Part shown: piece after piece, positions 3,501 to 61,088 of the stretch | Position numbering within the stretch: position 1 is the stretch's first letter | Layout: the number at the start of each line of letters is the position of its first letter | Assembly (NCBI RefSeq): GCF_052425735.1 | Contig: NC_135758.1 | Location: 4,154,001-4,218,000 of the forward strand | Source: Oculina patagonica | Lineage: Eukaryota | DNA length: 64,000 nt | Reading direction: 5' to 3' | Translations under genes and position numbers: made by a program | The notes under the pieces: model-generated | What the model was told of the DNA's origin: nothing | The model's input: the letters and a program-made list of their open reading frames with translations, nothing else | Databases searched by the model: none

Positions 3501-3722
3501 CCTTATTTTGAAGACTTCTGCATAGAGAACTCTAAAGTGCATAGCTATAATACTAGAGGATCAAAGCAGCTTCACAAGACATTTAACAGAACAAATTATG
3601 GGAAATACTCCACTAGGAAAAAGATAATTAACATCTGGAATGAAATACCAAAGACTATCAAATGCTCTGCATCTTTAAAAATCTTTAAAACGAAAATGAA
3701 GCAATTCTATTTGCAAAATTGA
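507..3722 (+). pseudogene. LINE ORF2 (endonuclease-reverse transcriptase) with one in-frame stop
   Basis: Same-frame ORFs 507-1730 and 2022-3722; the intervening sequence reads through as Lys-rich ORF2 linker. Confidence 0.85.
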
Positions 3723-8292: not shown

Positions 8293-11200
8293 TTACTCGT
8301 CATGCTCAAGAAAGCACAGTTTTGAAATCGGTCTAACGAATGTCGAGGTGTTTGTGCGAACTCTTGCCGATCTGACCAATCCATCCTTTCCACGATGAAC
8401 TTCAACAATTCTGGCCAAAGGCCTTTTGCCTCGATGAACACTTTCATCCGCGACCAGGACTAAATCGTTAACCGCAAAACAACGACGAGGAGTGCACCAT
8501 TTCTGCCTCAATTGAAGAGTTGGTAAATACTCTTTTAGCCAGCGGCTCCAAAATACATCTGACATGTATTGCACCTGTCGCCAACGACGCTTGCAATAAT
8601 TGTCTTCCATTGCGAAGACTCCAGGAGGTAAGTTAGGGTTTGCTCGTAGAAGCAGTAAATGGTTGGGCGTCAGGGGCTCTAGATCCTTGGGATCATTGCT
8701 GACCGGCGTTAAAGGTCTGCTGTAAAGGATTCCTTGCACCTCGGCCATCACGGTACGCAACATCTCTTCGTTTACCAGTTGTTGCCCTAGCAACGCCGTC
8801 AAAATCTTGCGGATTGATCTGATCACGCGCTCCCAAACGCCGCCCATATGCGATGCGGATGGTGGGTTAAATTTCCAGGTGACGTTTCTTTGACGGAGAA
8901 ACTCAGTGATGGCTCTCTGATTCCAATCTTCTATGGCTATACGCATTTCTTGCTCCCCGGCGCGAGAATTGGAACCATTGTCGCTGTAGACTGTCGTTGG
9001 GTTCCCTCTGAAACTGGTGAACCTACGCAAAGCATTAACAAAGGAATCTGAATCCAGAGAGCACGTAATCTCGATATGAACGGCCCTGGTCGTTAAACAC
9101 GTAAACAAACAGCCGTAACGCTTCACGTTGGAACGCCCTTGCTTAACGTACAGGGGACCAAAATAATCCACGCCAACTGAGGTAAATGGAGGATCTTCAG
9201 GAGACAACCTTTCCTTGGGTAAATTAGCCATTAACTGTTCTCCACGGGCTGCACCAAGTTTCCTGCACAGGAAACATTCACTAAGAACTCGACGCACGGC
9301 CGATCGTCCTTTAACAACCCAATATAGTTGACGGAGATTGGACAAAACGTATTCTTGTCCGAGATGACCTGCATCTTGATGGTACTTTCGAATAATCAGG
9401 TCCGTGACGCGATGACGATAAAGCAGAACTATTTGGTGTTTTGCGTCAAAATTGATGCCAGCATTCTCTAGCCTTCCTCCAACCCGAAGAATTCCGTAGC
9501 CATCCAGCACTGGACAGAGCTTGCGTAAGGGCAAGGCAGACTTCAATTTCCTTAGATGGGGTTTAACTTGGCGTGCTGATACTTGATTTCTGGAAATTCT
9601 TCGAAGAGCTTCAAATGCTTTCGGGAAGGATAGCTTTTGTAAATGCCTGATTATCTCCATTTCGGCTACTCGAACTTCATCGACAGACAATTCTCCTCGA
9701 GGTGATTGACTAACGGAGGAACTGCTGTTCACTGAAAGACCACGATGCCTTTGAACCGACCAATTCTTGAATCTCAGCAGCCATGCAAATGCTTTTCTCA
9801 GCTTATCCCAGGAGGAATACTGATGAAATAACCTTGAGAGAAAATCTTCTGCTGGTTGATTTAATACAGCCTGGCTGAACGTATGAACATCTCGTTTGAG
9901 TTCTGGATCGTCTACAGATAGTTCTTTCAGTTGGTGGGAAGGATCACGAGGCCAAAGGCCCTCTTCTCTCGACAGGAACTCTGGGCCACACAGCCATTTA
10001 CTTGAGATCATCCCATCAACTGTCAATCCTCTGCTAGCGTGATCAGCGGGGTTAAGCTCAGAGTTCACGTATTTCCACTGCTTTGGCTCGGAATGTTCGT
10101 GAATTACCGTGAGGCGGTTAGATACAAACGTATGGAATCTGGAAGACTCATTCCTAATATACTGGAGCACTGTAGTAGAATCTGACCAAAATACAGATTG
10201 TTGCACTGGTATTTCAAGCTCGGTCTTCAGTGTCTTGTCCAATTGGACGGCCAGAACCGCAGCTGAAAGTTCTAGTCTCGGAACTGTCATCGGCTTGATG
10301 TGCGCAAGACGGGACTTTCCCATGAGAAACGAGCAGCAAGCATTATCCTTCGTGTCCACCAGTCTTAGATACGAGACAGCACCAAAGGCAAACTGCGAGG
10401 CGTCAGCGAAGTTATGTAACTCGACGGTCTTCAATTCTCCGAGATCGGCAGGTTTGACACACCTCTTGACAGCTAACTGTGAAAGTTTGGGCAATTCTTC
10501 TTTCCATTTCTCCCATCTCTGACTTTCTTTCTCGTCAACCGGATCATCCCAGTCTAGCTTTAGCTTGCATAAATCCTGAAGTAATTGCTTCGCAGGAAGA
10601 ATGATTGGCGCCAGGAACCCTAGTGGATCGTAGATCGAGCTTTTCAGAGACAATATATCTCTGCGCGTGTTGGGCTTATCTTTCAGAACGGCATTGAAAA
10701 TGAACATATCCTTCTGCATGTCCCATCTTAGACCCAAGGTCCGCTCAACAGGAAGTCTTTCCTTGTCCAAGTCGAGGTCGAGGACTGACGAAGCTCTCTC
10801 ACTTTCAGGTATCGTCTCCATAACTTGGGGTCTTTTACTGAGCCACTTGTGAAGACGGAACCCACCCCTGGAGAGAAGATCTCGTAGTTGAGCCACAAGG
10901 TTAACAGCGTGAGTAGATGATTCTACCGACTTGAGGCAATCATCCACGTAAAAGTTCTTCTTTACAGTCTCCACAACCTCTTTGCCAAATTCATTGATGT
11001 TATCTTCTGCAGTTTTCCTGAGGGCGAAGTTGGAACAAGCCGGCGACGACGTGGCCCCAAATAAGTGAACCTCCATGCGGTACTCAACAGGTTCCTGATT
11101 CAGGTCATCGTCCGGCCACCATAGAAATCTAAACGCGTCATAATCGTCTGGCGACACTCTCACCTGGTGGAACATGGCTTCCACGTCTGCTGCTAGTGCG

Positions 11201-14200
11201 ACTTGTTCGTGACGAAATCTTGTCAACACACCCACGATACTGCTTGTTAGATCTGGACCACTTAGGAGATGATCATTCAAAGACATTCTTCTAAACTTTG
11301 CCGCACAATCAAAGACCACTCGCGTCTTTCCGGGCTTGTTAGGATGGAACACGGGGTGATGAGGTAAGTACCACAACGGTTTATCTTCGACTACAAGCTC
11401 ATTCTCTGGAACTCTTTTTGCGTGCCCCTTGTCTACGTAATCTCTAATTGTTGCTTTGTACTTTTCAAACAGTTCGGCATCTTGCAGGAATCTCTTCTTC
11501 AACGACATCAACCTACGTTCCGCCAAAACCCGATTATTAGGAAGGTTAGGCACTCGCTCTCTCCAGGGAAGAGCCAGTTGATAACGACCGTCAACTAACT
11601 TGGCTGAACTCTCCATCACTGCTAGAGCTCTTTTGTCTTCAACGGACATGGAAACCTTGCAATCAGGGATCAGACCAGCATAGTCAGTCTTCCAGAATCT
11701 TTCAAGTTGTTCCATGAAGATATCTTCTTTTTCAACATTTGCAATTCTCGTGAAGTTAACACAGTGATGGCCTTTCTTACATTCCATTCTGTCTATGGGG
11801 CTCATTAACGTCCATCCCAGCGGTGAACGAATAGCGTACGGATCACCTTTGTTGCCACGCCTTTCTTCCAATACCCAAAAGGCCTCTGGGACATTGCATC
11901 CATTGTGATCAGTTCGATGTTAGTCTCTTCGATGCTTAGCAGATTGATGTCTTGCAAATGAGGCCAACTGCTAATGTCTTGGTTGGTTGGAATGCTGTGG
12001 CTAGATGCATTTACTTTGTCAACTGTCCAAAGTCTCTGAATTTCTAACTTGTCTGACCCGTCCAAGGCTTCAACCGTTAGGCTTATCTCTTGACCCGACT
12101 TCGGACTGTCTTCCTTCTCTTGCGTTGTTAAGTAAAACGTTTTCTGCTCTCCTTGAACCCCCAGACGCGCTGCCAAGCCTTTAGTACACAGGGAGACATC
12201 CGACCCGTTGTCAAGAAGGGCGTAGGCTAACAACTTCTCGCTCGAGTTCTGACATTGGACTTTCACTGGCACGATCCTGAGACACACTTTACCACTTCCC
12301 GCTTGGGTACTGTTCAACTGTCCACCTTGGGCACCTTGAGTAGGCGTAGGAATAGTAGCTTGTGTAGCTTGGATACCTTAGGAAGCCTGTGATATCTTGG
12401 TAGCTTGAGTAGTTTGGGGAGCCTGTGGTCTCTGGGTAGCTTGAGTAGCTTGGGGAGCCTGCGGTATCTGGGTAGCTTGAGTAGCGTTACCTCCACTGGC
12501 CTGGTTACCGTTCGGAACTTGTTGACAGGAAGGATGGAGCAGAGTGTGATGCTTTCTCGTACAACCATCAACTTGACATGCACCTCTGGATAGGCAACCC
12601 CGTGCGATATGACCATATTGGAAGCAATTGTGACAAAGATGAGCCCTTCTCATAATCTGAACACGTTCATCAAAGGTCTTTCTTCCAAAGTTCTGACATT
12701 TCATCAAAATGTGATTGCCGCTGCAAGCTGGACAAACACGGGTCTTCACCCTTGAATTAACAGTTCCTTGGGTGTTAAGCGTAGTGATACGGTTAGGCGA
12801 TGGTTCACTCGTTTTTGAACTCGGTGGCCTTTGTTTTGAAGTTCCCCGTTTGCTGTCAGGCGTAACGTCCATAACGCTTCCAAATACTGGATTATTTGCT
12901 GCTCTTGCTTTGACTGCAACAAACGACGAGATGTCCTTGATGTTTGGTCTCTTGCCAGATTGCTGGATACCGTCTGCGACTTCGACAAACTTTGTACGAA
13001 GATGACATGGTAATCTTTGTACTATTCTTCGGAGGTTGTCAGCACTGTTGACCTCATCAATGTAGCCTATCGACTCGAGGGTGTGTTCACAGTTTTTTAG
13101 CTGGTCGGCAAACGCAAGTAATCCCGAACGATCAGACGCCTTAATTGGAGGACCCTCAGTAATCTTGCTTACAAACTTAGCCGCAATTGTATACGGATGG
13201 CCAAAACGCTCTTTCAGCAATTTCCTCGCGGACTGATATCCCTTTGAAAGATCCATAACAACGCAACAATCAATCGTCTTCTTCGCTTCGCCCGTTGTGT
13301 ATTGCAATAGGTACATGAGCTTCTCACTTTCACTCGTTGCGTTTCGTTCAATAGTGTTCTCAAACGACCGGATAAAACTCCGATATTCCATTGGGTTGCC
13401 ATCAAAGGTGGAGAGGTCAGGTTTAGGCAAGGCAAATCCCTGTCTTATTGTCGAGCCCAGTTTATCAAGCACGTCTTCAACGATGGCAAATTCGGAATCC
13501 ACGGAATCAGTCTGAGAAAGTTCATTATCTGGAATCGGCGGGGCGTACGTAAACTCCCTCGCGTGCGGGTTCAGCCGAGAACTATAACATCATTGTCGTA
13601 AGGAACTATTTTGAGGTCGTCTTTGGTTTTGGTCACAACTCCGACATCTTTAACTTTGGATTCGCCATCGCGCTGTGAACCAAGTTCTCCAAAAGATGAA
13701 CCAGTTTGCTTCGACATTTTCGGTATTGCTCCATCAATAACGGAATGATCTTCTTCGAGGATTTTTACTTGAAGAGCCGCCTGCTCTAGTTCATATTTCG
13801 CCTCTAGAATTTGACGCTCCATTTTCATTTCCTCTTGCTTTCTTAAAAGTTCTTGTTCCTCTAAGGCCCGGTTCAGACGCCGTACTTTTCATGAGCCGAA
13901 CTCAATTCGAATTTGGACCGACCCAAATTGACAAAAGTATGCCTCTTGATTCAGACGCCGTACTTTTTGGCCGTTCCGAGGCCGTTCCTAATACAGTTCC
14001 AATAAAACCAGTCAAAATACATTATTATAATTTATGAATTAGGATCGGCACATGAAAAGTACGGCGTCTGAATCAAAGCTGTTCCAAAGGCATTCCACAG
14101 GCGAAATTCTCGGCCAAGCCAGGCGGGAAGAACGGGTGAGCCGTTCCAAATTGAAATAGCCGTTCTAATTTGATTCAGACGCCGATCTTTTCATGTACTT

Positions 14201-17034: not shown

Positions 17035-20000
17035 ATGAATGACATAGCAGAAGTTATAGATGCCATTTTTATTGGCTCAGTTGTTGCTACTTTCCTTCTC
17101 AACACTGGTCGTGCTCTCAAAGCTATCGACGTATGTGAAGAATGTATTATTTTCCTAAATATTAAAGCACTGGGGAAAGGAAATCAAATTGGTAAATTAC
17201 TTTACAGCACGATCTACATTACAGTGTTCACGGCATATCGTATAATCCCTGATTATACAAGTGCAATAAAATACGGCAAGAAACTTCTTGACATTTACCG
17301 CGAGGGTGGTGAAACAGCCAACAAATGGAACAGAGCGAAAGAAGCAGCGGCTAACGAAAACCTAGGAACTGTGTTTGAATCTCTTGGGGAATATGACAAA
17401 GCTAAAGAATACTTTGAGAAAGCGCTTGCTATCAAACTTGCAATTGGCGACAGAGCCGGAGGAGCAGTAGATTACGGAATCCTTGGGATTTTGTTTAAAT
17501 CTCTTGGTGACTATTTAAAAGCTAAAGAATATCTTGAGAAAGCACTTGCGATCAGAATTGAAATTGGGGACAGAGCAGGAGAAGGTAATTCTTACGGAAA
17601 CTTAGGAACTCTGTTTTCATCTCTTGGTGAATATGACAAAGCTGAAGGATACCTCGAGAAAGCACTTGCGATCAAAATTGAAATTGGTGACAGAGCAGAT
17701 CAAGCAGAAGTTTACGGAAACCTAGGAACTGTGTTTCAATCTCTTGGTGAATATGACAAAGCTAAAGAATACCTCGAGAAAGCACTTGCAATCAGTATTG
17801 AAATTGGCGATAGAGCAGATGAAGCAGAAGTTTACGGAAACCTAGGAACTGTGTTTAAACTTCTCGGTGAATATGATAAAGCTAAAAAGCATCTCGAGAA
17901 AGAACTTGCAATCAGAATTAAAATTGGCGATAGATTAGGAGAAGCAAGCTCACACGAAAAGCTAGGGACTGTGTTTCGATCTCTTCGTGAATATGACAAA
18001 GCTAAAGAACATTACGAGAAAGCACTTGCTATCAGAATTGAAATTGGCGACAAAGCAGGAGAGGCAAGAGTTTACGGAAACCTAGGAACTGTGTTTCGAT
18101 CGCTTAGTAAACATGACAAAGCTAAAGAAAATCTCGAAAAAGCTCTTGCGATCAGAATTGAAATTGGCGAGAGAGATGGAGAAGGAAGGTCTTACGCAAA
18201 CCTAGGGATTGTGTTCAGATCTCTTGGTAAATATGACAAAGCTAAAGAATGTCTCGAGAAATCGCTGGCAATCTGCATTGAAATTGGTGACAGAGAAGGA
18301 GAAGGAAGGTCTTACGCAATTCTAGGCATTGTGTTCAGATCTCTTGGTAAATATGACAAAGCTAAAGAATGTCTCGAGAAATCGCTGGCAATCTGCATTG
18401 AAATTGGTGACAGAGAAGGAGAAGCAAGGTCTTACGAAAACCTAGGGATTGTGTTCAGTTCTCTTGGTAAATATGAAAAAGCTAAAGAATGTCTCGAGAA
18501 ATCGCTGGCAATCTGCATTGAAATTGGTGACAGATCAGGAGAATCAGCAGGTTACGGAAACCTAGGAAGAGTATATCAGTCTCTTGGTAAATATGACAAA
18601 GCCAAAGAAAACCTCGAGGAAGCACTTGCTATCAATATTGAAATTGGTAACAGAGAAGGAGAAGCAGCAATTTACGGAAACCTTGGAACTGTGTTTCACT
18701 CTCTTGGTGAATATGACAAAGCTAAAGAATATTTTGAGAAAGCACTTGCGATTACAAATGAAATTGGCGACAGAGAAGGAAAAGCAAGATCTTTCGGAAA
18801 CCTAGGGGCTGTGTTTGAATCTCTTGGTGAATACGACAAAGCTAGAGAATATCTCGAGAAAGCACTTGCGATTACAATTGCAATTGGCGACAGAGCAGGA
18901 GAAGCAGCAGTTTACGGAAATCTAGGAACTGTGTTTCGAGTTCTTGGTGAATATGACAAAGCTAAAGAAAATCACGAGAAAGCACTTGCTATCAATATTG
19001 ATATTGGCGACAGAGCAGGAGAAGCATCAGCTTACGGAAACCTAGGAGTTGTGTTTCGATATCTTGGTGAATATGACAAAGCTAGAGAATATCACGAGAA
19101 AGCACTTGCGATCAGAATTGAAATTGGCGAAAGAGCGGAAGAAGCAACAGATTACGGAAACCTAAGTGTTGTGTTTGGATCTCTTGGTGAATATGACAAA
19201 GCAAAAGAATATCTCGAGAAAGCACTTGCTATTAAAATTGAAATTGGCGACAGACAAGGAGAAGCAGCAGGTTACCAAAACCTTGGGTGTTTGTTTGATT
19301 CTCTTGGTGACCATGTCATGGCCGAAGGTTATCTGGAGAAAGGACTTTTAATTAATCAAGATATTGGAGACGCCCACCAGGAGTTTTCATGTTTATGTAA
19401 CCTCACATTTGTGAAGTTATTCCAAAAAAAGATCCAGGAAGCTTTTCACTATCTGTTTCTGAGTGTGCAAAAAAGCGAAGATTTGCATGGTTTTCTGCGA
19501 GACAATGATGAATTTAAGACAGCACTATCAGACGTTCACGAATTTCCACACCAGGTTCTTAGTGCACTATTTTGTTCTCTTGAAAATCCTAACAATGCCC
19601 TTTATGTCCTAGAGCTGGCACGGGCTAGAGCCCTTGCAGACTTGATGACGACTCAGTATTCTGTTGAAAGGCAAATCTCAGCTGATCCGCAATCGTGGGT
19701 GGGTATCGAAAATACTATGAAGAAAGAAAGTAACTCTGCTTGTCTATACATTTCTTATTATGGTGCAGATATGTTTTTGTGGATTCTCAAGATAAGCGGA
19801 GTCATTCTTTTTCGAAGAATAACAGTTAATGAAAACATCGTAGGTGTCAGATTAGTTTCCAGTTTACATGATTTTTTCTCCAAAAGCTTTCGAAGCCTAG
19901 GTATTTTGTCCCAGCAAAATTGTGAAGATCGATCTTTAAATGGCATTGAAACAAAAAAGATTTTTTCTCAGGAAGAGGTACTCCCAGATTTGCGCCTTGT

Positions 20001-20895
20001 AGAAGATGATGACGACGGCAATCAAGATCCTGAACCGAGTCTTTCTTTGTTGTACAAAATGATCATCGCTCCTGTGGCTGACTTGCTTGATAAGCCTGAA
20101 ATCATCATTGTTCCTGATCGCTCTTTGTATCAGGTTCCATTTGCAGCATTAACTGATAAAGGCGGGAATTATTTATCAGAGACTTTCAGGATCCGCATCG
20201 TTCCTTCACTGTCGACCCTCAAGCTCATTCAGGACAGTCCAACAGACTATCACAGTCAGACTGGTGCACTGATAGTGGGTGATCCTGTGGTTGGCCGGGT
20301 GCGTTACAAGGGATGTCGTAAGACGTTTAACCCATTGCCATGTGCAAGAAAGGAAGCAGAGATGATTGGACGACTGCTGGACGTTGAGCCTTTGTTAGGA
20401 GAGCACGCAACGAAACAGGCAGTTTTTGACAAGATAAATTCAGTGGGTTTGATACATTTTGCTGCTCATGGTAATGCCGAAAGAGGAGAAATTGCTCTCT
20501 CGCCCTTATGCACTGCTACTGGAATTCCACACGAAGAAGACTACCTGTTGACAATGTCTGACATTTCACAAGTTCGATTACGAGCTAAGCTGGTAGTACT
20601 TAGCTGTTGTCACAGTGGGTGTGGTCAAATTCGAACCGAGGGAGTTGTTGGAATCGCTCGAGCGTTCTTAGGATCCGGTGCACGTTCAGTACTGGTGGCA
20701 CTGTGGGCTATAGAGGATAGAGCAACAGAGCTGTTTATGAAAAATTTCTACGAACACCTTGTTCGTGGGGAAAGTGCCAGTGAATCTCTTCATGAGACCA
20801 TAAAGTGGATGAAAGGTAACGGCTTTACCAAGGTTTCCGAGTGGGCACCGTTCATGCTGATTGGAGACAACGTGACATTTGACTTTGGAAAATAA
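17035..20895 (+). CDS. TPR-CHAT protein copy A (TTC28-like), 1286 aa, intact; 17 x 40-aa TPR units plus caspase-like CHAT domain
   Basis: Uninterrupted ORF with repeat GEAxxYGNLGxVFxSLGEYDKAKEYxEKALAIxIEIGDR. CHAT motifs IIVPD...VPF, IHFAAHG (His codon 20467), VVLSCC (Cys codon 20608), GARSVLVALW and WAPF. Confidence 0.93.
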   Translation: MNDIAEVIDAIFIGSVVATFLLNTGRALKAIDVCEECIIFLNIKALGKGNQIGKLLYSTIYITVFTAYRIIPDYTSAIKYGKKLLDIYREGGETANKWNRAKEAAANENLGTVFESLGEYDKAKEYFEKALAIKLAIGDRAGGAVDYGILGILFKSLGDYLKAKEYLEKALAIRIEIGDRAGEGNSYGNLGTLFSSLGEYDKAEGYLEKALAIKIEIGDRADQAEVYGNLGTVFQSLGEYDKAKEYLEKALAISIEIGDRADEAEVYGNLGTVFKLLGEYDKAKKHLEKELAIRIKIGDRLGEASSHEKLGTVFRSLREYDKAKEHYEKALAIRIEIGDKAGEARVYGNLGTVFRSLSKHDKAKENLEKALAIRIEIGERDGEGRSYANLGIVFRSLGKYDKAKECLEKSLAICIEIGDREGEGRSYAILGIVFRSLGKYDKAKECLEKSLAICIEIGDREGEARSYENLGIVFSSLGKYEKAKECLEKSLAICIEIGDRSGESAGYGNLGRVYQSLGKYDKAKENLEEALAINIEIGNREGEAAIYGNLGTVFHSLGEYDKAKEYFEKALAITNEIGDREGKARSFGNLGAVFESLGEYDKAREYLEKALAITIAIGDRAGEAAVYGNLGTVFRVLGEYDKAKENHEKALAINIDIGDRAGEASAYGNLGVVFRYLGEYDKAREYHEKALAIRIEIGERAEEATDYGNLSVVFGSLGEYDKAKEYLEKALAIKIEIGDRQGEAAGYQNLGCLFDSLGDHVMAEGYLEKGLLINQDIGDAHQEFSCLCNLTFVKLFQKKIQEAFHYLFLSVQKSEDLHGFLRDNDEFKTALSDVHEFPHQVLSALFCSLENPNNALYVLELARARALADLMTTQYSVERQISADPQSWVGIENTMKKESNSACLYISYYGADMFLWILKISGVILFRRITVNENIVGVRLVSSLHDFFSKSFRSLGILSQQNCEDRSLNGIETKKIFSQEEVLPDLRLVEDDDDGNQDPEPSLSLLYKMIIAPVADLLDKPEIIIVPDRSLYQVPFAALTDKGGNYLSETFRIRIVPSLSTLKLIQDSPTDYHSQTGALIVGDPVVGRVRYKGCRKTFNPLPCARKEAEMIGRLLDVEPLLGEHATKQAVFDKINSVGLIHFAAHGNAERGEIALSPLCTATGIPHEEDYLLTMSDISQVRLRAKLVVLSCCHSGCGQIRTEGVVGIARAFLGSGARSVLVALWAIEDRATELFMKNFYEHLVRGESASESLHETIKWMKGNGFTKVSEWAPFMLIGDNVTFDFGK
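17338..19380 (+). repeat. Coding tandem array of 17 x 120-nt TPR units
   Basis: Exact 120-nt periodicity (units at 17341, 17461 ... 19261). The units at 18181-18540 are nearly identical to each other. Confidence 0.95.
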
Positions 20896-31666: not shown

Positions 31667-33373
31667 ATGAATGACATAGCAGAAGTTATCCAAGCCATAT
31701 TTACAGTATCTATCGGCCTATATGTTTCTATTTTCCTTCTCAACACTGGTCGTGTTCTAAAAGCCGTCGAAATATGCAAAGAATGTTTGATTTTCCTAAG
31801 TACTAAAGCACTAGGGAAAGAAGAGAAATTTGGCAAACTAGTTTACGGCGCTATCTACAATACAATGTTCAGGGCATATTGTGTAATCTCTGATTACACA
31901 AATGCAATAAAATACGGCAGGAAACTTCTTGCTATTTACCGCGAGTGTGGTGAAACAGCCGAAGAAGGGAATATTACCAAAGCTCTAGCCGGCATATATG
32001 AACGGCGGTGTGAATATGCAGAGGCAAGAGAACTTTATGAGAGAGCGATCAATATAATGATAGAAATTGACGACAGAAAAAGACAAGCAAACGCTTATGA
32101 AAAACTCGGAACTATCTTATCACCTTGGCGAATATGTGACAATTACGATTTTTCACACCAGGTTCTTAGTGTATTCTTTTGCGTTGTTTATGAGAATCCT
32201 AACAATGCCCTTTATGTTGTAGAGCTTGCACGGGCTAGAGCCCTAGCAGACTTGATGGCGACTCAGTACTCTGTTGAAAGTGAAATCTCAGCTAATCCGC
32301 AATCGTGGATTGGTATTGAGAATATCATGAAAAAAGAAAATAACTGTACTTGTCTTTACATTTCTTGTTATGCCCAAGATATGTTTTTGTGGATCCTCAA
32401 GACAAGCGGAGAAATTTCTTTTCGAAGAATAACAGTAAATGAAAACATCATTGGTGTTGGCAGTTTGGATGAGTTTTTTGCTAAATGCTGCCGCAGCGTA
32501 GGTGTTTTATCCCAGCAGGACTGTGAAGATCGATCCAATGAACCGAGTCTTCCCTTGTTATACAAAATGATCATCGCTCCCGTGGCTGACTTGCTTGAGG
32601 AGCCTGAAATCATCATTGTTCCTGATCGCTCGTTGTACCAGGTTCCAGTTGCAGCATTAACTGATGAAGGTGGGAAGTATTTATCAGAGACTTTCAGGAT
32701 CCGCACTGTTCCTTCGTTATCGACTCTCAAGCTCATTCAGGACAGTCCAGCAGACTATCACAGTCAGACTGGTGCACTGATAGTGGGCGATCCTGTGGTC
32801 GGCCGGGTGCGTTACAATGGTCGTCGTAAAACCTTCTTACCATTGCCTTGTGCAAGAAAGGAAGCAGAGATGATTGGGGAACTGCTGGGTGAACAGCCTT
32901 TGTTAGGACAGCACGCAACCAAACAGGCGGTGCTTGAAAGGTTAAATTCAGTGAGTCTGATTCATTTTGCTGCACATGGAAATGCTGAAAGAGGAGAAAT
33001 TGCCCTTTCCCCTCTACGCTCTACTAAAAAGATTCCACGTGAAGAAGACTACCTATTGACAATGTCGGACATTTCACAGGTACCACTGCGAGCTAAACTG
33101 GTGGTACTTAGCTGCTGTCACAGTGGACGTGGACAGATTCGAGCGGAGGGAGTGGTTGGAATCGCTCGAGCGTTCTTAGGATCTGGTGCACGTTCAGTAC
33201 TGGTGGCACTGTGGGTCTTAGATGATCTGGCAACAGAGCAGTTCATGAGATGTTTCTACGAGCACCTTGTTCGTGGGGCAAGTGCCACTGAATCTCTTCA
33301 CGAGACTATGAAGTGGATGAGAGCTAATGGCTTTACCAAGCTAAGGTTTCCGAGTGGGCACCGTTCATGCTGA
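31667..33373 (+). CDS. TPR-CHAT copy B: TPR array and acidic loop deleted, C-terminal frameshift (possible pseudogene)
   Basis: N-terminus is homologous to A and D. It jumps at ~32120-32145 from the second TPR unit straight to the post-array linker. AAHG and LSCC are retained. A 5-nt insertion (CTAAG, 33341-33345) removes the WAPF terminus. Confidence 0.75.
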   Translation: MNDIAEVIQAIFTVSIGLYVSIFLLNTGRVLKAVEICKECLIFLSTKALGKEEKFGKLVYGAIYNTMFRAYCVISDYTNAIKYGRKLLAIYRECGETAEEGNITKALAGIYERRCEYAEARELYERAINIMIEIDDRKRQANAYEKLGTILSPWRICDNYDFSHQVLSVFFCVVYENPNNALYVVELARARALADLMATQYSVESEISANPQSWIGIENIMKKENNCTCLYISCYAQDMFLWILKTSGEISFRRITVNENIIGVGSLDEFFAKCCRSVGVLSQQDCEDRSNEPSLPLLYKMIIAPVADLLEEPEIIIVPDRSLYQVPVAALTDEGGKYLSETFRIRTVPSLSTLKLIQDSPADYHSQTGALIVGDPVVGRVRYNGRRKTFLPLPCARKEAEMIGELLGEQPLLGQHATKQAVLERLNSVSLIHFAAHGNAERGEIALSPLRSTKKIPREEDYLLTMSDISQVPLRAKLVVLSCCHSGRGQIRAEGVVGIARAFLGSGARSVLVALWVLDDLATEQFMRCFYEHLVRGASATESLHETMKWMRANGFTKLRFPSGHRSC

Positions 33374-34860
33374 TTGGAGATAACGTGACATTTGACTTTG
33401 AAAAATTAAAGTAAGTATAACAGAAAGAACAAGATGTTCATTTAATGAAACATGGTTAGGGTGCAGTTGTAACAGTATGTTTTTTTACTTAATTGTATGT
33501 GAATGTGTTCAAACCGATGAATGATGAATGTTTGCGCTGCAAGTGGAGTTAAAAAGTGAAGAAGGGTGGTTGGGGAACTTGATACGGGCGACCATTGACA
33601 TGTAGTGAAATGGTGACTAAGATTTAATGCACTTCCTTGATCACTCCCCAGAAAGCCAGAACTGGCTTATAAGTGAAATGACTTATAACTGGGTTTATCT
33701 TTTTCTTGTTTTAGGAAAGCAAGAGAGCTCGAGCCAGACCCTGCATGCAGCAAGTAATGAGATGTGAATTATGTACAAATGTAAAATAGCAAAGCCTTTG
33801 TTATTAGCTAGGCGAATAGGCCGTTTGTCTCTGTTTCAAAGCGCGCCCCGTGAATACTTTTTTTCATACGAAATGAGGAGTTCATCTGCATGAAAATGAA
33901 CGTGCGGGTAAATCGCATTTGCATCGGAATTGTTCGTACAGAAAGGCGGCTCGAAAATGGTCTCTTCCGGGTCTCCTTGGAAAATCTTTTATACGAAAAT
34001 GAGTTTCACTAAGTCAAATACACGTTCATTTATGGAAATCCAATTCATTTCAATATTAAAACATTTGCCCGATAACTCGTTTTGAAACAGTGCAAAGCTG
34101 AGGCAACCCGGAAATGACCTATTGTATTTTGTGTCATTGCCTTTCCTTTTCAATTTTAAAGACATGCCTTTCAGTGCTTTAACCAATCATGTGTATTTGG
34201 TTGTGTAGTGAAGGCAAAATACGTAATTTCTAGTGTGCATATCATAAGTAGCGTGTTAAAGCCGGACTGATTTAGTTATTGGAAGTTATAATGACACCTC
34301 ACACGAATGGTCATTATAGTTTCCAATATTTAAATTTCCATTTACAATACTAAATGCTCATCGAAACGTACTCAATGAAAGTTAAGTTACTTTTTTGTCA
34401 AATGTATATAGGAAGCAAACGTTTTATTATAGCCCTAAAACGCGGGCTAAGCCTTTGAATGGTTTGAAGGGTTTTGTTACAAGTAACCAAGTTCATAGCC
34501 TGCGTAGCAGACGACACAGTTTCGAGCTCGCGTATAGGAAACGCGAAAGGCGCGAGGGGGCCACGACTTTTCCTCGCGCGGCCTTCTCGCTATCGCGCAC
34601 TCTTTTAAAGGGATACTCTATGCCTTATATGAAGTTTTGCTTAAAAGGTAGTATTTGCCCTATAATATTGGATTTATGACGAAAAATGTGAAGACTGATC
34701 GAAGGTTAAGAAAGGAAAAATCGGTGTTCAAAAGCGCAAATTTGCTGTTTTCGAAGACCGGAAGTGAAAATGCTTTGAAGGCACGCACGTGACTAATGAC
34801 GTAGATGTGAGAACTCGTGCTCAGCTGGATGTTTTGCACGTAAAGCAATTACTGGCAATT

Positions 34861-39100: not shown

Positions 39101-39490
39101 GCTCCTGGGTTGGTTTTTGGACTGCTGAGTACACGACCCTTGCGAAGACGACTCTTTCGTGACTTCTGCAAGTGAGCTATCATCCCGTCTTTGCTTTTTT
39201 TGTGGCGGACCATTGTTACGGTTAAATATGGTTGGAACAGCGTCGGGTTTTAAAATTCTTTTCATGTTTAATCCTAGCGACACAGCAATTACCGTCTGTG
39301 CTTCAAATGAGTCGTCTGCGAAGTGACTACTGCAGAGTTTGCTTGAAGCCGTCTGAGAAAAATCAGATCGCGTGTTTCTCACGGCATTCGTCCATTGGCG
39401 AGCAACTTGAGGATCTGAAGGCCAGCCATGGAGACTTACATCGTTCTTATTAGTATTGGAACATCCACCGGCTACACAGCGATGTGGCAT
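36198..39490 (-). CDS. THAP-domain DDE transposase (Kolobok), ~9 exons
   Basis: Exon 1 is a THAP domain (MPHRCVAGGC...W...LCSSHF...AVPTIF). Later exons give a CPVC/CLSC Zn module, GDGRCDSPGHSAKY, ITDRH, DGWH, NHMFWC, TSSLEAFHS, HFNEN and a terminal PRPLSADFDRPDK...SRFKNN*. Approximate exons: 39490-39074, 38975-38804, 38722-38511, 38413-37870, 37792-37606, 37522-37262, 37161-36991, 36827-36679, 36361-36198. Confidence 0.85.
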
Positions 39491-47849: not shown

Positions 47850-50519
47850 ATGAACAACATAAAAGACGTTTTACAAGCCATCTCTATCGGCGTAATTGTC
47901 GCTACGTTTCTTCTTAACACTGGTCGTGGTTTAAAGGCAATCAATTTATGACAAGAATGTTTGATTTTACTAAGTACTCAAGCACTGGGGAAAGAAAACT
48001 CGAAGAAAACCAATTTGGCAAATTAGTCTACGGTGCGATGTACTTCACAATGTTCAGCGCATAAAAAATTGTGTCATCCCTGATTACACAAATGCAATAA
48101 AATACGGCAGAGAAGTTCTCGCCATGTACCGTGAGCCGGGTGGTGATACAGTGCGCGAAGGTAAATTTTCGATAAAGTTGGCAAAGATATGTGAAGATCA
48201 ATGTAATTACGTACAGGCAAAAGAGTTTTATGAGAGCGCGATCAAGATCATGAGAGAAAATGACAAAAGCAAAGAAGAGGCCTACGCCCAGGAAAAGCTG
48301 GCAGGTATATTTCGTTCTCTTGGTGAATATGTCAAGGAAAAAGAACATCTTGAAAAAGCACTTGCTCTCAGAATAAAAATTGGTGACAAAATGAGAGAAG
48401 CAGCAAACTACGGAGACCTAGGAAATGTGTTTGAACATTTTGGTAAATATGTCGAAGCTAAAAATTATCTCGAGAAAGGACTTGCGATTTGTGTGGAAAT
48501 AGGTCACAAACAAGGAGAGTCGTCATTTTATGGAAACCTAGGAATCGTGTTTTATTCTCTTGGTGAATATGTCGAAGCTAAAAGATATATCAAAAAAGCA
48601 CTGTCTATCGAAATAGAAATTGGTGACAGAAAAGGACAAGCATCATCTTATGGAAAGCTAGGAGCCGTGTATCGAAATCTTGGGGAATATGACAAGGCTA
48701 AAGAAAATCTTGAAAAAGCACTTGCGATCAGAATAGAAATTGGCGACAGAAAAGGGGAAGCATCATCGTATGGAAGCCTAGGACAGGTGTTTCAATCTCT
48801 TGGTGAATATGTCAAAGCTAAAGAATATCACGAGAAAGCACTTGCGATCTTTACTGATATTGGTTTCAGAGAAGGTGAAGCAACAGTTTGCGGAAATCTA
48901 GGAATGGTGCACGTATCTCTTGGTGAAAATGTCATGGCTGAAGGTTATTTTGAGAAGGCGCTTCCAATTTGTCAGGATATTGGAGACGGTGATGGAGAGT
49001 TTCGATGTCATTGTAATCTTTCATTTGTGAAGTTGTCGCAAGGAAAGACCAATGAAGCCTTTTTTCATTTGTCTCTTAGCGTAAAGAAATGCGAAGATTT
49101 ACGAAGTTTTATTCGAGACAACGATCAGTTTAAGATATCTCTCTCAGACATGCACACGTTTCCCTTCAAGATCCTCAGTGCAATGTTTTGTGCTACTGAA
49201 AGTCATCGTGAAGCTCTATATGTTGTGGAGCTAGGACAGCTCGAGCCCTAGCAGATTTGATGGCAGCTCACTACTCAGTTGACAAACAACTCTCAGCTGA
49301 TCCGTATTTACTCGCATTGGTGGGCATTGAAATTGATGTTATGAAGAAGGAAAGAAACTGTTCTTGTCTGTATATTTCTTACTATGGTGAAGAGGTATTT
49401 TTGTGGATTCTCAAAGCAAGCGGATTCGATTTTCGAAACCTAAAAGTAAACAACATTGTTGACGTTGCATCAGCTAGAAATTTAGATGAATTTATAGCTG
49501 CGAGCTCCCTCGTCTTTGGTATTTTCACCGATGAGGATTGCGAAGATCGATCCTTAAATGACATTGAACCAAAAACAAAATCTTCTCCGGGAGAGCTAGA
49601 GAGACCTGCAGCTTTACAAGAAATAAAAGATGACGATAAAGAAACCCTATTGTCTGCGTCGATTCTTTCTTTGTATTCTAAGATGATCATTAGTCCTGTG
49701 GTTGACTTACTTGTGGAACCCGAAATCATCATTGTTCCTGATCCCTCTTTGTATAAAGTGCCATTTGCAGCTTTACGCGATAAAAGTGGGAAGTATTTGT
49801 CAGAGACTTACAGAATCCGAATCGTTCCTTCATTAATGACTCTCAAGCTCATTCAGGACAGTCCAGCAGACTATCACAATCAGACTGGTGCTCTGATAGT
49901 GGGTGATCCTGATGTTGGCAAAGTGCTTTTCAAGGGTCGTCGTATAACCTTCCTACCATTGCCTTGTGCAAGAAAGGAAGCAGAGATGATTGGACAACTG
50001 CTGGGCGTTGAGCCTTTGTTAGGACAGTGCGCAACCAAGCAGGCGGTGCTTGAAAGGTTACATTCAGTGAGTCTGATACACTTTGCTGCTCATGGTAATG
50101 CCGAAAGAGGAGAAATTGCTCTTGCACCTGTGTGCACTGCTACTGCAGTTCCAGGAGAAGAAGATTACCTGTTAACAATGTCAGACATTTCACAAGTTCA
50201 ACTGCGAGCTAAATTGGTAGTACTAAGCTGTTGTCACAGTGGTCGTGGACAGATTAGAGCCGAGGGAGTGGTTGGAATCGCTCGAGCGTTCTTAGGATCC
50301 GGCGCACGTTCAGTGCTGGTGGCACTGTGGGCCCTAGATGATATAGCAACAGAGCAGTTCATGAGACGTTTTTATGAGCACCTTGTTCGTGGGGAAAGTG
50401 CCAGTGAATCTCTTCACGAGGCCATGAAGTGGATGAGAGGTAACGGCTTTACCGAGGTTTCCGAGTGGGCACCGTTTATGCTGATTGGAGATAACGTGAC
50501 ATTTGACTTTGGAAAATAA
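47850..50519 (+). pseudogene. TPR-CHAT copy C (~7 TPR units), disabled
   Basis: ATG at 47850 (MNNIKDVLQAI...), stop at ~47949 and further N-terminal lesions. ORFs 48124-49251 and 49257-50519 are separated by a 1-nt frameshift in ELGRARAL. The CHAT domain is complete (AAHG, LSCC, WAPF). Confidence 0.85.
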
Positions 50520-58814: not shown

Positions 58815-61088
58815 ATGAATGACATAGAAGAAGTACTTCTTGCGCTCTTCATCGGCTTAGTTGTTGCTACTTTCCTTCTCAAGACTGGTCGTACTCTAAA
58901 AGCCATCGAGATATGCAAAGAATGTTTGTTTTTCCAAAATAATGAAGTACAGAAAAAAGAAGCTCAACTTATCAATTTATTTACCATTGGTGTCTATCGA
59001 GCAATGTTCGACGCATATTGTCTTCTCACTGATTACACAAATGCAATTAAATACGGCAGGGAACTTCTTGTCATTTACAGGGAATGTGGTGAAACAGCCG
59101 AAGAAGGAAATATTACCACAGCACTAGCCGACATATATAAAAGACAATATAAATATGTGGAGGCAAGAGAACTTTATGAATGAGCGATCAACATCATGAA
59201 AGAAATTGGCCATAGAAAAGGAGAAGCATACGCGTATGGACAATTCGGAATTATGTCTCATCGTCTTGGCGAATATGTTAAAGCTAAAGAATATCTTTAG
59301 AAAGCTCTTACAATCATAATTGAAATTGGCGACAGAGTGACAGAAGCAACCTGTTACGGAAACCTAGGGGCTGTGTTTAGATCTCTTTCTGAAAACGTCA
59401 AAGCTAAAGAATATCACGAGAAAGCACTTGCGATAAGAATTGAAATTGGTGACAGAGAAGGAGAAGCAACTGGTTATGGAAACCTTAGATCTGTGTTTCA
59501 ATCTCTTGGTGAATATGACAAAGCCAAAGAACATCACAAGAAAGCACTTGCAATCAGACTTCAAATTGGCGACAAGGTAGGAGAAGCATCATCTTACGGA
59601 AATCTAGGAACTGTGTTTAGTTATCTTGGTGAATACGACATAGCTAAAGAACATCTTGAAAAAGCACTTGCCATCAGAATTACAATTGGTGACAAAGCAG
59701 GAGAAGCAACAAATTACGGAAACCTAGGAACTGTGTTCTTTTCTCTTGCTGAATATGATAAAGCTAAAGGATATCTAGAAAAATCACTTGCAATCGGAAT
59801 GGAAATTGGCGACAGAGCAGGAGAAGCAGTAGCTTACGGAAACCTAGGAACTGTGTTTCATTCTCTCGGTGATTTTCGAAGGGCTAAAGAAAATATTGAG
59901 AAAGCACTTGCGATCAGAATTGAAATTGGCGACAGAGAAGGAGAAGCAAGAGATTACGGAAACCTAGGAGCTGTGTTTCAAAGTCTTGGTGAATATGATA
60001 AAGCTAAAGAATATCACGAAAAAGCACTTGTGATCAAAATTGAAATTGGCGACAGTGCAGGAGAAGCAGCAAGTTACGGAAACCTAGGGATTGTGTCTCA
60101 ATCTGTTGGTGAATATGTCGCGTCCGAAGGTTATCTGGAGAAGGCACTTTCAATTAGTCAAGATACTGGAGACGCCCACCAGGAATTTTTATGGTATTGT
60201 AACCTCACATTGTTGAAGTTATCCCAAGAAAAGATCCGGGAAGCGTTTCACTATCTGCTTCTGGGTATTAAAAAAGGCGAAGATTTGCGCGGTTTCCTGA
60301 GAGACAATGATCAGTTTAAGATAGCATTTTCAGATGTCCACGATTTTCCCTACCGTAAGTTTAGTGCATTCTTTTGTGTTTATGGGAGCCCTAACAATGC
60401 CCTTTATGTTTTAGAGCTGGCGCGGGCTAGAGCTCTAGCAGACTTGATGGCGACTCAGTACTCTGTTGAAAGACAAATCTCAGCTAATCCGCGATCGTGG
60501 ATTGGTATTGAGAATATTATGAAAAAAGAAAATAGCTGCGTTTGTCTCTACATTTCTTATTATCGAGAAGATGTGTTTTTGTGGATTCTAAAGACAAGCG
60601 GAGTCATTCACTTTCAAAGAATAACAGTAAATGAAAGCATTTTTGGTGCCGGATTTGTTTCCAGTTTGCATGATTTTTTCTCCAAAAGCTTTCGCAGCTT
60701 AGGTATTTTATCCCAGTAAGACTGTGAAGATCGATCTTTAAACGGCATTGAACCCAAACCGAAATTTTCTCAGGAAGAGATACTCGCAGATTTGCGCCTT
60801 GTAAAAGAGAAAGATGATGATGAAGACGACAATCAAGATCCTGAACCGAGTCTTCCTTTGTTATACAAAATGATCATCGCTCCTGTTGCTGACTTACTTG
60901 ATGAGCCTGAAATCATCCTTGTTCCTGATCGCTCTTTGTACCAGGTTCCATTTGCAGCATTAACTGATGAAAGTGGGAAGTATTTATCAGAGACTTTAAG
61001 GATCCGCATCGTTCCTTCATTGACGACTGTCAAGCTCATTCAGGACAGTCCAGCAGACTATTACAGTCAGACTGGTGCACTGATAGTG
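58815..61088 (+). pseudogene. TPR-CHAT copy D (~9 TPR units), three in-frame stops, interrupted before the catalytic core
   Basis: Same-frame ORFs 58815-59183, 59337-60719 and 60792 onward. Stops at 59181, ~59298 and 60717. Homology to A ends at GALIV (61088). Confidence 0.88.

What the first reader, a model, noticed from the sequence alone, without database searches (positions are those of the whole stretch)
17338..19380. Hypervariable codons embedded in highly conserved 120-nt repeats
Seen: scaffold codons such as AACCTAGGA, CTTGGTGAATATGACAAAGCTAAAGAA and GAAATTGGCGACAGA are conserved even at silent sites. A fixed set of helix-A positions varies in almost every unit. The two residues before Y are AA, VD, NS, EV, SS, RV, RS, AG, AI, AV, SA and TD. 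The residue after LG is T/I/R/A/V/C, and the residue after VF is E/K/S/Q/R/H/G/D. At the position before Y the codons are GCT/GAT/TCT/GTT/GGT/ATT, so bases 1-2 change while base 3 almost always stays T. Copies C and D vary at the same positions. Inference: diversifying selection (or targeted mutation) on the concave ligand-binding face, combined with concerted evolution of the scaffold, as in LRR/VLR or fungal HET repeats.
Basis: partly seen in the sequence, partly recalled or inferred. Interest (0 to 1): 0.8.

Follow-up and report, generated by a model that had tools for sequence, protein, structure and literature searches.

The report
Coral TPR-CHAT gene with hypervariable repeat positions
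The repeats are the 17-unit sensor arm of an intact coral TPR-CHAT (caspase-like protease) gene, one of several hundred copies in this genome, and seven fixed positions per repeat change amino acids about twice as fast as silent sites, as expected of a fast-evolving receptor surface.

Summary
Window 17338-19377 holds 17 in-frame 120-nt units inside one intronless 1286-aa ORF (17035-20895, +). The ORF reads N-terminal cap, 17 LGN/Pins-type 40-residue TPRs, linker, then a CHAT protease with an intact His/Cys dyad.

By database names the genome is the coral Oculina patagonica. The gene belongs to the published, massively expanded coral TPR-CHAT (TTC28-like) family, with at least 474 candidate copies here.

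On 140 independent unit pairs from 31 arrays, dN/dS at these columns is 2.2 (CI 2.0-2.4), against 0.6 for the scaffold and 0.3 for CHAT. It exceeds 1 in all 27 non-redundant arrays, and a maximum-likelihood test gives 1.67 (P = 4e-4).

Synonymous change is not clearly raised at these codons, so targeted mutation is not supported. Five of the seven columns lie on groove-lining helix A, and two match LGN residues that salt-bridge its ligand.

Concerted evolution is only partly supported. Units of this gene are no more alike than units of other paralogs, but some paralogs are 92% homogeneous and near-identical gene copies differ in unit order.

Function as a sensor-protease is inferred. The scan's first readers flagged the same family elsewhere in this genome.

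The parts
17035..20895 (+). Intact intronless ORF (1286 aa plus stop) of a TPR-CHAT protein, called gene A here. An in-frame stop lies 9 nt upstream of the ATG.
   Evidence: The NCBI model of the same locus (1138 aa) is identical in sequence but removes two stretches inside the repeats.
17035..17337 (+). N-terminal 101-aa helical cap (degenerate TPR-like helices). No other domain was found.
   Evidence: It is conserved at 56-65% identity at the start of paralogs B, C and D.
17338..19377 (+). Seventeen 120-nt units encoding 40-residue TPRs; unit 17 is a divergent C-terminal cap. Hypervariable codons are unit columns 4, 5, 11, 14, 26, 33 and 40, i.e. nt 10-15, 31-33, 40-42, 76-78, 97-99 and 118-120 of each unit.
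18178..18537 (+). Units 8-10, a recent three-fold unit duplication with 3-9 nt differences between copies. The NCBI gene model splices most of this stretch out.
19378..20034 (+). Helical linker between the TPR array and CHAT. It is the unique part of the gene and is found nearly unchanged in contigs of independent runs.
20035..20892 (+). CHAT caspase-like protease domain (PF12770, E = 1e-57). Dyad motifs are HFAAHG at 20455-20472 and LSCCHSG at 20599-20619.
   Evidence: Both motifs are invariant in 30 of 30 paralogs. dN/dS of linker plus CHAT is 0.30-0.37.
31667..33405 (+). Paralog B: cap, 2 degenerate units, shortened linker, and a CHAT domain with a frameshift near its end.
47850..50516 (+). 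Paralog C: 6 units and at least two frameshifts (in the cap and in the linker). Probable pseudogene.
58815..61088 (+). Paralog D: 8 units, an in-frame stop in unit 1, and a CHAT domain truncated after about 81 aa. Probable pseudogene.

Best explanation
The region is the ligand-sensing arm of an intact member of the coral-expanded TPR-CHAT (TTC28-like) family.

Shown: (1) the architecture is cap, 17 LGN-type 40-residue TPRs, linker, then a CHAT protease with a conserved His/Cys dyad; (2) the protease half evolves under purifying selection; (3) seven fixed positions per TPR unit accumulate amino-acid changes about twice as fast as silent changes, while the other 33 positions are constrained; (4) most of these positions lie on helix A around a conserved Asn, the arrangement LGN uses to hold an extended peptide in its inner groove; (5) arrays are remodelled by unit duplication, loss and replacement, even between gene copies whose protease halves are 99.5% identical.

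Inferred: the TPR superhelix binds a peptide or protein ligand. The Asn ladder would hold the ligand backbone and the hypervariable neighbours would read its side chains. Binding would control the C-terminal caspase-like protease, by relief of autoinhibition or by clustering. Hundreds of diversified copies would then form a repertoire of intracellular sensor-proteases, most likely for non-self or danger recognition. Diversity would arise in the germline through ordinary mutation plus selection and unequal recombination among units and paralogs, not through a dedicated mutator.
For: Architecture and family: relatives named TTC28-like in Oculina, Orbicella and Stylophora; 474 candidates, 85 scored, all E < 1e-209. 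Published coral expansion: PMC12314368 and PMC9145168.

Selection at the hypervariable columns: dN/dS is 2.2 (pair bootstrap 2.0-2.4). With the codons' own synonymous rate it is 1.76 (1.57-1.99). For pairs with 10 or fewer nt differences it is 3.0. The scaffold is at 0.6. On 27 non-redundant arrays the gene-level CI is 1.97-2.43, and 27 of 27 arrays exceed 1. GY94 maximum likelihood gives 1.67 against 0.40, with LRT 2dlnL = 12.6 against omega = 1.

Recent duplicates L017/L019: 9 replacements in 42 hypervariable codons, 4 in 198 scaffold codons, 6 in 504 linker+CHAT codons.

Other corals: the same columns top within-protein entropy in 97 proteins of several corals.

Structure: helix boundaries; LGN is the closest natural solved fold (E = 1e-46, TM 0.76-0.79); LGN contact residues map to columns 4, 8 and 14; TPR positions 2, 9 and 12 are canonical ligand positions (PMC1261162).

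Protease half: dyad conserved in 30 of 30 paralogs and dN/dS 0.3.

Unit remodelling.
Against: No ligand, protease activity or expression was shown. No run on record as RNA holds the gene.

Columns 26, 33 and 40 were picked from the same data that tested them. Columns 26 and 33 lie on helix B, which is the outer helix in LGN.

Only the C-terminal 12 or so units of each paralog could be read. The maximum-likelihood test assumes one tree although units recombine.

If short gene-conversion tracts reset silent divergence while selection merely preserves old differences, dN/dS would overstate ongoing change.

The scaffold dN/dS of 0.4-0.6 is high, so the whole array is only loosely constrained.
Confidence: 0.7

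Rival explanations
1. Conversion plus preservation. Frequent gene conversion among units keeps the scaffold and its silent sites similar. Purifying selection only protects long-standing differences at the specificity positions of each unit. Under this reading dN/dS above 1 reflects maintained diversity, not ongoing adaptive change.
For: Unit-to-unit silent divergence is flat (p4 0.22-0.31) and does not track CHAT divergence (0.09-0.31, rho = -0.38). Units show no positional orthology between paralogs. Several arrays are 92% homogeneous.
Against: Hypervariable codons sit only 3-20 nt apart, so tracts would have to be implausibly short. Silent sites inside and next to those codons change at normal rates. 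dN/dS rises to 3.0 in the youngest unit pairs. The near-identical genes L017/L019 already differ at 9 hypervariable codons.
Confidence: 0.15
2. Relaxed constraint only. The variable columns are simply the unconstrained surface positions of recently amplified repeats and drift neutrally.
For: The same positions (2, 9, 12) are the most variable across TPRs in general (PMC1261162). The scaffold dN/dS is itself high at 0.4-0.6. Three of the four copies in the window are decaying.
Against: Neutral drift cannot exceed dN/dS = 1. Every confidence interval excludes 1, 27 of 27 arrays exceed 1, and the likelihood test rejects omega = 1 at P = 4e-4.
Confidence: 0.08
3. Programmed diversification. A targeted mutator, or somatic cassette assembly of the VLR or DGR kind, rewrites these codons, with neighbouring pseudogene copies as donors.
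For: Broken paralogs with arrays varying at the same columns lie within 45 kb. Unit order differs between near-identical genes. Reverse-transcriptase elements are nearby.
Against: The germline ORF is complete. The synonymous rate at the hypervariable codons is only 1.3 times the scaffold rate, and in gene A the third base is almost fixed. Changes show no base-specific bias: 122 transitions and 179 transversions, spread over codon positions 1 and 2. There is no template/variable repeat pair. Contigs of four runs gave no sign of variants, but they were too short to judge.
Confidence: 0.03
4. Assembly artefact. The array is mis-assembled from reads of many paralogs, so its mosaic of units is not a real allele.
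For: Short-read contigs break up over the array and pile up at family-wide words. The NCBI model skips units 8-11.
Against: The array is an uninterrupted ORF in perfect 120-nt register, in a window without N on a piece of tens of Mb. Unique stretches of the gene recur with 0-3 differences in four independent runs and with 92% of words in five runs of two studies. The same statistics hold in 26 other arrays.
Confidence: 0.02

Closest known systems
Coral TPR-CHAT domain-containing proteins / TTC28-like expansion (Acropora, Montipora, Pocillopora; PMC12314368, PMC9145168)
   Same: Same architecture: a long N-terminal TPR_12 array plus one C-terminal CHAT domain. Copies number in the hundreds and sit in tandem clusters in transposon-rich regions. 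TPR length is highly variable. Database relatives are named TTC28-like.
   Different: Those papers report copy number, haplotype variation and TPR length. In the parts read they give no per-site analysis, no dN/dS on the repeats and no unit-level remodelling. This report adds those, for a different coral, Oculina.
Highly internally conserved TPR/ANK/WD repeats of fungal NLRs (HET-E/HET-D/NWD, Pa_2_10340; PMC4986451)
   Same: Nucleotide-similar tandem repeats. A few positions per unit are under positive selection and map to the concave face. Repeat number changes, and units are exchanged within and between paralogs (one search compared).
   Different: There is no NACHT or NB-ARC module and no HET or other death domain; the effector is a CHAT protease. 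Internal conservation in this gene (68% aa) is below the fungal 85% criterion, although several paralogs meet it. The host is an animal, and allelic polymorphism was not tested.
LGN/GPSM2 and Pins TPR domain (PDB 3SF4, 3RO2, 4WND, 7EP7)
   Same: Same 40-residue TPR subtype, aligned without gaps at 32-33% identity and TM 0.76-0.79. Both have a conserved Asn in helix A. Helix A lines an inner groove that holds extended peptides (PMC6525239).
   Different: LGN has 8 repeats fixed across species, GoLoco motifs and no protease. Its repeats share no nucleotide-level similarity of this kind. In LGN column 11 is a conserved Asn; here it is hypervariable.
Human TTC28 (TPRBK)
   Same: TPR array followed by a CHAT domain; the presumed ancestor of the family (PMC9145168, PMC12314368).
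   Different: One or two copies per genome, with a proposed role in cytokinesis. Whether its repeats show any of this pattern was not tested here.
Bacterial type III-E Craspase TPR-CHAT (Csx29)
   Same: A TPR arm controls a CHAT caspase-like protease that is switched on by a binding event. This is a precedent for a sensor-protease logic (PMC11089037, title and abstract only).
   Different: It works bound to Cas7-11 and crRNA, has a short irregular TPR region, and is not known for a hypervariable repertoire. No sequence comparison was made here.

Membership tests
Coral TPR-CHAT / TTC28-like family | N-terminal array of TPR_12/TPR_1-type repeats | tested here: met
   PF13424 E = 1e-203 with 15 stretches; 17 units of 40 aa
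Coral TPR-CHAT / TTC28-like family | Single C-terminal CHAT domain with the caspase-like His/Cys dyad | tested here: met
   PF12770 E = 1e-57, full length; HFAAHG and LSCCHSG are invariant in 30 of 30 paralogs
Coral TPR-CHAT / TTC28-like family | Lineage-specific tandem expansion in transposon-rich regions | tested here: met
   474 candidates and 85 scored hits, many on C1 at 4.1-5.9 Mb. Four copies lie in this window among LINE, BEL/Pao and Mutator/THAP elements.
Coral TPR-CHAT / TTC28-like family | Close relatives in other scleractinians carrying that name | tested here: met
   56-82% identity over linker+CHAT to proteins named TTC28(-like) in Oculina, Orbicella and Stylophora
Fungal-NLR-type highly internally conserved repeats | More than 85% amino-acid identity between units over at least 100 aa | tested here: not met
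   Gene A: 68% aa and 80% nt. The criterion is met by paralogs L007, L009-L012 and L027-L029 (85-89% aa).
Fungal-NLR-type highly internally conserved repeats | Positive selection at a few positions per unit | tested here: met
   Seven columns with dN/dS 1.8-2.7; class value 2.2 (CI 2.0-2.4); ML 1.67 with P = 4e-4
Fungal-NLR-type highly internally conserved repeats | Selected positions lie on the ligand-binding (concave) surface | tested here: inconclusive
   Five of seven lie on helix A. Columns 4 and 14 match LGN ligand-contact residues. Columns 26 and 33 lie on helix B. No coordinates were available.
Fungal-NLR-type highly internally conserved repeats | Repeat-number change and unit exchange | tested here: met
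   This holds between paralogs: L009, L010 and L011 (CHAT 99.5% identical) differ by unit indels and replacements, and units 8-10 of gene A are triplicated. Allelic polymorphism could not be tested.
Fungal-NLR-type highly internally conserved repeats | Central NACHT or NB-ARC nucleotide-binding module | tested here: not met
   Pfam finds only TPR families and CHAT. An upstream in-frame stop closes the ORF 9 nt before the ATG.
VLR/DGR-type programmed diversification | Incomplete germline gene completed from donor cassettes, or a template/variable repeat pair | tested here: not met
   The germline ORF is complete. Broken paralogs are nearby, but there is no cassette arrangement.
VLR/DGR-type programmed diversification | Raised mutation at the target codons irrespective of coding effect | tested here: not met
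   The synonymous rate at hypervariable codons is 1.3 times the scaffold rate. Single changes fall at codon positions 1/2/3 in counts of 98/131/72.
VLR/DGR-type programmed diversification | Somatic sequence variation within an individual | not testable with these tools
   Only short contigs of public runs were available, and they fragment over the array.
LGN/Pins orthologue | Eight TPRs followed by GoLoco motifs | tested here: not met
   Same TPR subtype and fold, but 17 units, no GoLoco hit, and a CHAT domain instead

The most novel reading that the evidence does not exclude
Corals may run a large germline-encoded repertoire of NOD-less sensor-proteases. In it, hundreds of TPR-CHAT genes and pseudogenes would swap and duplicate 40-residue recognition units. 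Each colony would then carry its own set of specificities. That set could underlie pathogen or symbiont discrimination, or the still unexplained genetics of coral allorecognition. It would be an animal counterpart of the fungal HET/NWD system with a caspase-like executioner.
Probability: 0.12. Interest if true: 0.85.

Novelty: new variant of a known kind. Interest (0 to 1): 0.55.

Why it matters
The coral TPR-CHAT expansion is published, but only as a copy-number curiosity with an assumed cell-cycle or generic ligand-binding role.

This analysis shows a constrained protease half joined to repeats whose groove-lining positions evolve at dN/dS of about 2. Arrays are also remodelled between near-identical copies. 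That combination is the evolutionary signature of a recognition repertoire, and it gives a concrete hypothesis: a peptide-binding TPR groove gating a caspase-like protease.

It names the exact residues to mutate or swap. It also offers candidates for coral innate immunity, symbiont sorting or allorecognition, in a species long used to study Vibrio-associated bleaching (own knowledge, not checked here).

The regime matches fungal NLR repeats, here joined to a CHAT protease and without a NOD module.

Tried and rejected
Only the C-terminal 12 or so units per paralog (L001-L030) were analysed.

2. Allelic or somatic variation. The runs are kept as short contigs that fragment and pile up over the family. 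They show only that the gene exists in four independent runs, plus two silent differences in unit 2. They say nothing on repeat-number alleles.

3. Expression. No run on record as RNA holds the gene's unique part. One run guessed to be RNA holds 20% of its words. Expression is unresolved.

4. Within-array concerted evolution in gene A. Rejected, because within-gene and between-gene unit distances are equal.

5. Recent inter-paralog transfer of single units. For example, A unit 12 and L002 unit 2 differ by 7 nt. Given the many comparisons this is not significant, so it is left as suggestive.

6. CpG or transition hot spots as the cause. Rejected, because hypervariable codons show more transversions than 4-fold sites do.

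7. IQ-TREE edge-linked partition run. It did not print omega and was replaced by separate runs on a fixed, scaled tree.

8. Residue-level LGN contacts from the NuMA and Inscuteable papers. Those papers are not held; the Whirlin complex paper was used instead.

9. Surface mapping on the AlphaFold model. The tool returns no coordinates, so only secondary structure and fold matches were used.
Full report
**What is there**

The window is G000:C1:4154001-4218000 of a 529-Mb assembly. The names attached to its closest database proteins identify it as the stony coral Oculina patagonica.

TRF reports a 120-nt period, 16.4 copies and 82% matches at 17340-19310. The array lies inside a single open reading frame, 17035-20895 on the + strand (1286 aa). 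An in-frame stop sits 9 nt upstream of the ATG.

Pfam finds TPR_12 (E = 1e-203, 15 stretches) and a full-length CHAT domain (E = 1e-57) and nothing else. Sliced from 17338, the array is 17 ungapped 40-codon units, the last a divergent cap.

The NCBI model of this locus (1138 aa) is identical except that it removes 31 aa in unit 1 and about 117 aa across units 8-11. The genomic frame is open throughout, so these are probably spurious introns called inside repeats.

**The family**

The linker+CHAT half finds 474 candidate places in this genome. All 85 that were scored have E < 1e-209, most with long open frames, and many lie on the same chromosome at 4.1-5.9 Mb.

Within the window only gene A is intact:
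- Copy B (31667-33405) keeps two degenerate units and has a frameshift.
- Copy C (47850-50516) has at least two frameshifts.
- Copy D (58815-61088) has a stop in unit 1 and a truncated CHAT domain.

The neighbours are a LINE-like element (507-3722), a BEL/Pao element (8293-13502) and a Mutator/THAP element (37860-39496).

This is the coral TPR-CHAT (TTC28-like) expansion already described in Acropora, Montipora and Pocillopora. Copy numbers there reach 276-362, in transposon-rich non-syntenic regions (PMC12314368, PMC9145168). In the parts read, those papers make no per-site or dN/dS analysis of the repeats.

**Checking the observation**

In gene A the most variable columns are 4, 33, 14, 5, 40, 11 and 25. 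The top seven of 40 columns carry 43% of all amino-acid differences.

Canonical TPR numbering is column minus 2, because column 6 (Y) is TPR W4.

Silent-site conservation is relative, not absolute:
- Third-base identity is 74% at invariant columns.
- Silent divergence between units is pS 0.28 and 4-fold p4 0.28.
- Unit identity is 80% nt and 68% aa: 24% at hypervariable columns, 78% elsewhere.

**Is it selection?**

I extracted 327 ungapped in-frame units from gene A, copies B-D and 29 paralogs. To avoid pseudo-replication and a single-tree assumption, I paired each unit with its nearest unit in the same gene, using each unit once. That gave 140 independent contrasts.

With kappa = 2.34 estimated from 4-fold sites, seven columns exceed neutrality. 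These are 4, 5, 11, 14, 26, 33 and 40, with dN/dS 1.8-2.6 and P from 1e-6 to 1e-17.

| Test | dN/dS at the seven columns | Source |
|---|---|---|
| As a class, pair bootstrap | 2.2 (2.0-2.4) | |
| Using only those codons' own synonymous changes | 1.76 (1.57-1.99) | |
| Pairs with 10 or fewer nt differences | 3.0 (2.4-3.9) | |
| 27 non-redundant arrays, gene-level bootstrap | 1.97-2.43; all 27 above 1 | |
| GY94+F1X4, fixed scaled tree, 126 units | 1.67, against 0.40 for the scaffold | |

The other 33 columns give 0.6 in the pair analysis. The maximum-likelihood run rejects omega = 1 with 2dlnL = 12.6 (P = 4e-4).

The other 26 arrays are an out-of-sample test of those four columns. Columns 26, 33 and 40 were found post hoc but pass any multiple-test correction.

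The protease half evolves at dN/dS 0.30-0.37. Its His and Cys motifs are invariant in 30 of 30 copies.

**Not a mutator**

Synonymous change at the hypervariable codons is only 1.3 times that of scaffold codons. Single-base changes there fall at codon positions 1, 2 and 3 in counts of 98, 131 and 72, with 122 transitions and 179 transversions.

So there is no CpG or base-specific signature and no excess at the third position. The observation that base 3 stays T is a gene A detail; family-wide that third base varies.

**Concerted evolution**

Units of gene A differ from each other by 26.5 nt on average, and from units of other paralogs by 24-29 nt. Fourfold divergence between units is flat (0.22-0.31). 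It does not follow the divergence of the attached CHAT domains (0.09-0.31; rho = -0.38). Nearest neighbours show no positional orthology.

Gene A's array is therefore not homogenised internally. Its units look drawn from a family-wide pool, apart from the recent triplication of units 8-10 (3-9 nt differences).

Other paralogs do have arrays about 90-93% identical in nt and 83-89% in aa. Three genes whose CHAT halves are 99.5% identical differ by unit insertion, deletion and replacement.

The pair L017/L019 is 99.3% identical in CHAT. Its six orthologous units differ by 9 replacements in 42 hypervariable codons, 4 in 198 scaffold codons and 4 silent changes. The 504 linker+CHAT codons differ by 6 replacements and 4 silent changes.

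**Where the sites sit**

A single-sequence AlphaFold model (pLDDT 80) gives these boundaries:
- helix A: column 39 of the previous unit to column 16
- turn: columns 17-18
- helix B: columns 19-36
- turn: columns 37-38

Columns 40, 4, 8, 11 and 14 follow an i, +4, +4, +3, +3 pattern, which is one face of helix A. Column 8 is the conserved Asn of GNLG.

The closest natural solved relative is the LGN/Pins TPR domain. It aligns without gaps at E = 1e-46 and matches structurally at TM 0.76-0.79 with 32-33% identity. In LGN, helix A lines the inner groove that holds extended peptides and helix B faces outward (PMC6525239; PMC9187228).

I fixed the chain-to-residue offset at +8 using five residues of known type. 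The LGN residues reported to contact Whirlin then map as follows:
- R136 and R236 map to column 4.
- K106 maps to column 14.
- N100, the backbone-bonding Asn, maps to column 8.
- Y139 maps to column 7.
- D81 and R221 map to column 29.

TPR positions 2, 9 and 12 are also among the seven most variable, ligand-contacting positions of TPRs in general (PMC1261162).

Columns 26 and 33 are seven residues apart on helix B. Their exposure could not be determined without coordinates.

The same columns (14, 40, 4, 33, 5, 11) top within-protein entropy in 97 database proteins, including ones from Orbicella and Stylophora.

**Mechanism**

Shown: the architecture, a constrained protease with an intact dyad, positive selection on helix A groove positions, and unit remodelling.

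Inferred: a peptide-binding TPR groove gates a caspase-like protease, multiplied into a repertoire. The Asn ladder would hold the backbone and hypervariable residues would set specificity.

Not shown: any ligand, activity or expression. No run on record as RNA holds the gene. Short public contigs could not address alleles or somatic change.

**Comparison and novelty**

The gene is a member of a published family. The evolutionary regime matches that of fungal NLR repeats, which combine positive selection on the concave face with repeat-number change (PMC4986451).

It differs in lacking a NOD module. Gene A also falls below the 85% internal-conservation criterion. It is not an LGN orthologue, and nothing supports VLR-like assembly.

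The per-site selection and unit remodelling in coral TPR-CHAT genes were not found in the literature searched. First readers of this scan flagged the same family elsewhere in this genome.

Noticed in passing
window 17035-20895 compared with protein P0002: The NCBI gene model for this locus (1138 aa) removes 31 aa in unit 1 and about 117 aa across units 8-11, although the genomic frame is open. These are probably spurious introns called inside near-identical repeats, so family-wide TPR lengths taken from annotation may be underestimates.
   Followed up: partly
window 507-3722 (+): Two adjacent ORFs in a 30% GC stretch encode an APE-type endonuclease (PF03372) and a reverse transcriptase (PF00078). 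This is a LINE-like non-LTR retrotransposon.
   Followed up: partly
window 8293-13502 (-): A BEL/Pao-type LTR retrotransposon at 45-47% GC. Its pol ORF carries Peptidase_A17, RT, integrase and DUF5641, and a gag-like DUF1759 ORF lies upstream. It was observed only.
   Followed up: no
window 37860-39496 (-): ORFs with a Mutator-like transposase hit and a THAP domain, inside the stretch that another first-reader note (s1-274314) calls a DNA transposon carrying a P2X7-tail-like gene.
   Followed up: no
L009, L010, L011 (G000:C1 4.67-4.81 Mb): Three TPR-CHAT genes have 99.5% identical linker+CHAT halves but different unit order and number. Their arrays are built from two alternating unit types (AAD...RA and ASS...KK/KN/RR). 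L011 carries one in-frame stop in its array and one in the linker+CHAT half.
   Followed up: partly
L024 (G000:C1:4282280-4286512): This is the closest CHAT relative of gene A (4-fold divergence 0.09). Its TPR units are nevertheless as distant from A's as those of any other paralog (0.27). The two halves of the genes therefore have different histories.
   Followed up: partly
window 12355-12485: A 9/36-nt tandem repeat lies inside the gag-like region of the BEL/Pao element (TRF).
   Followed up: no
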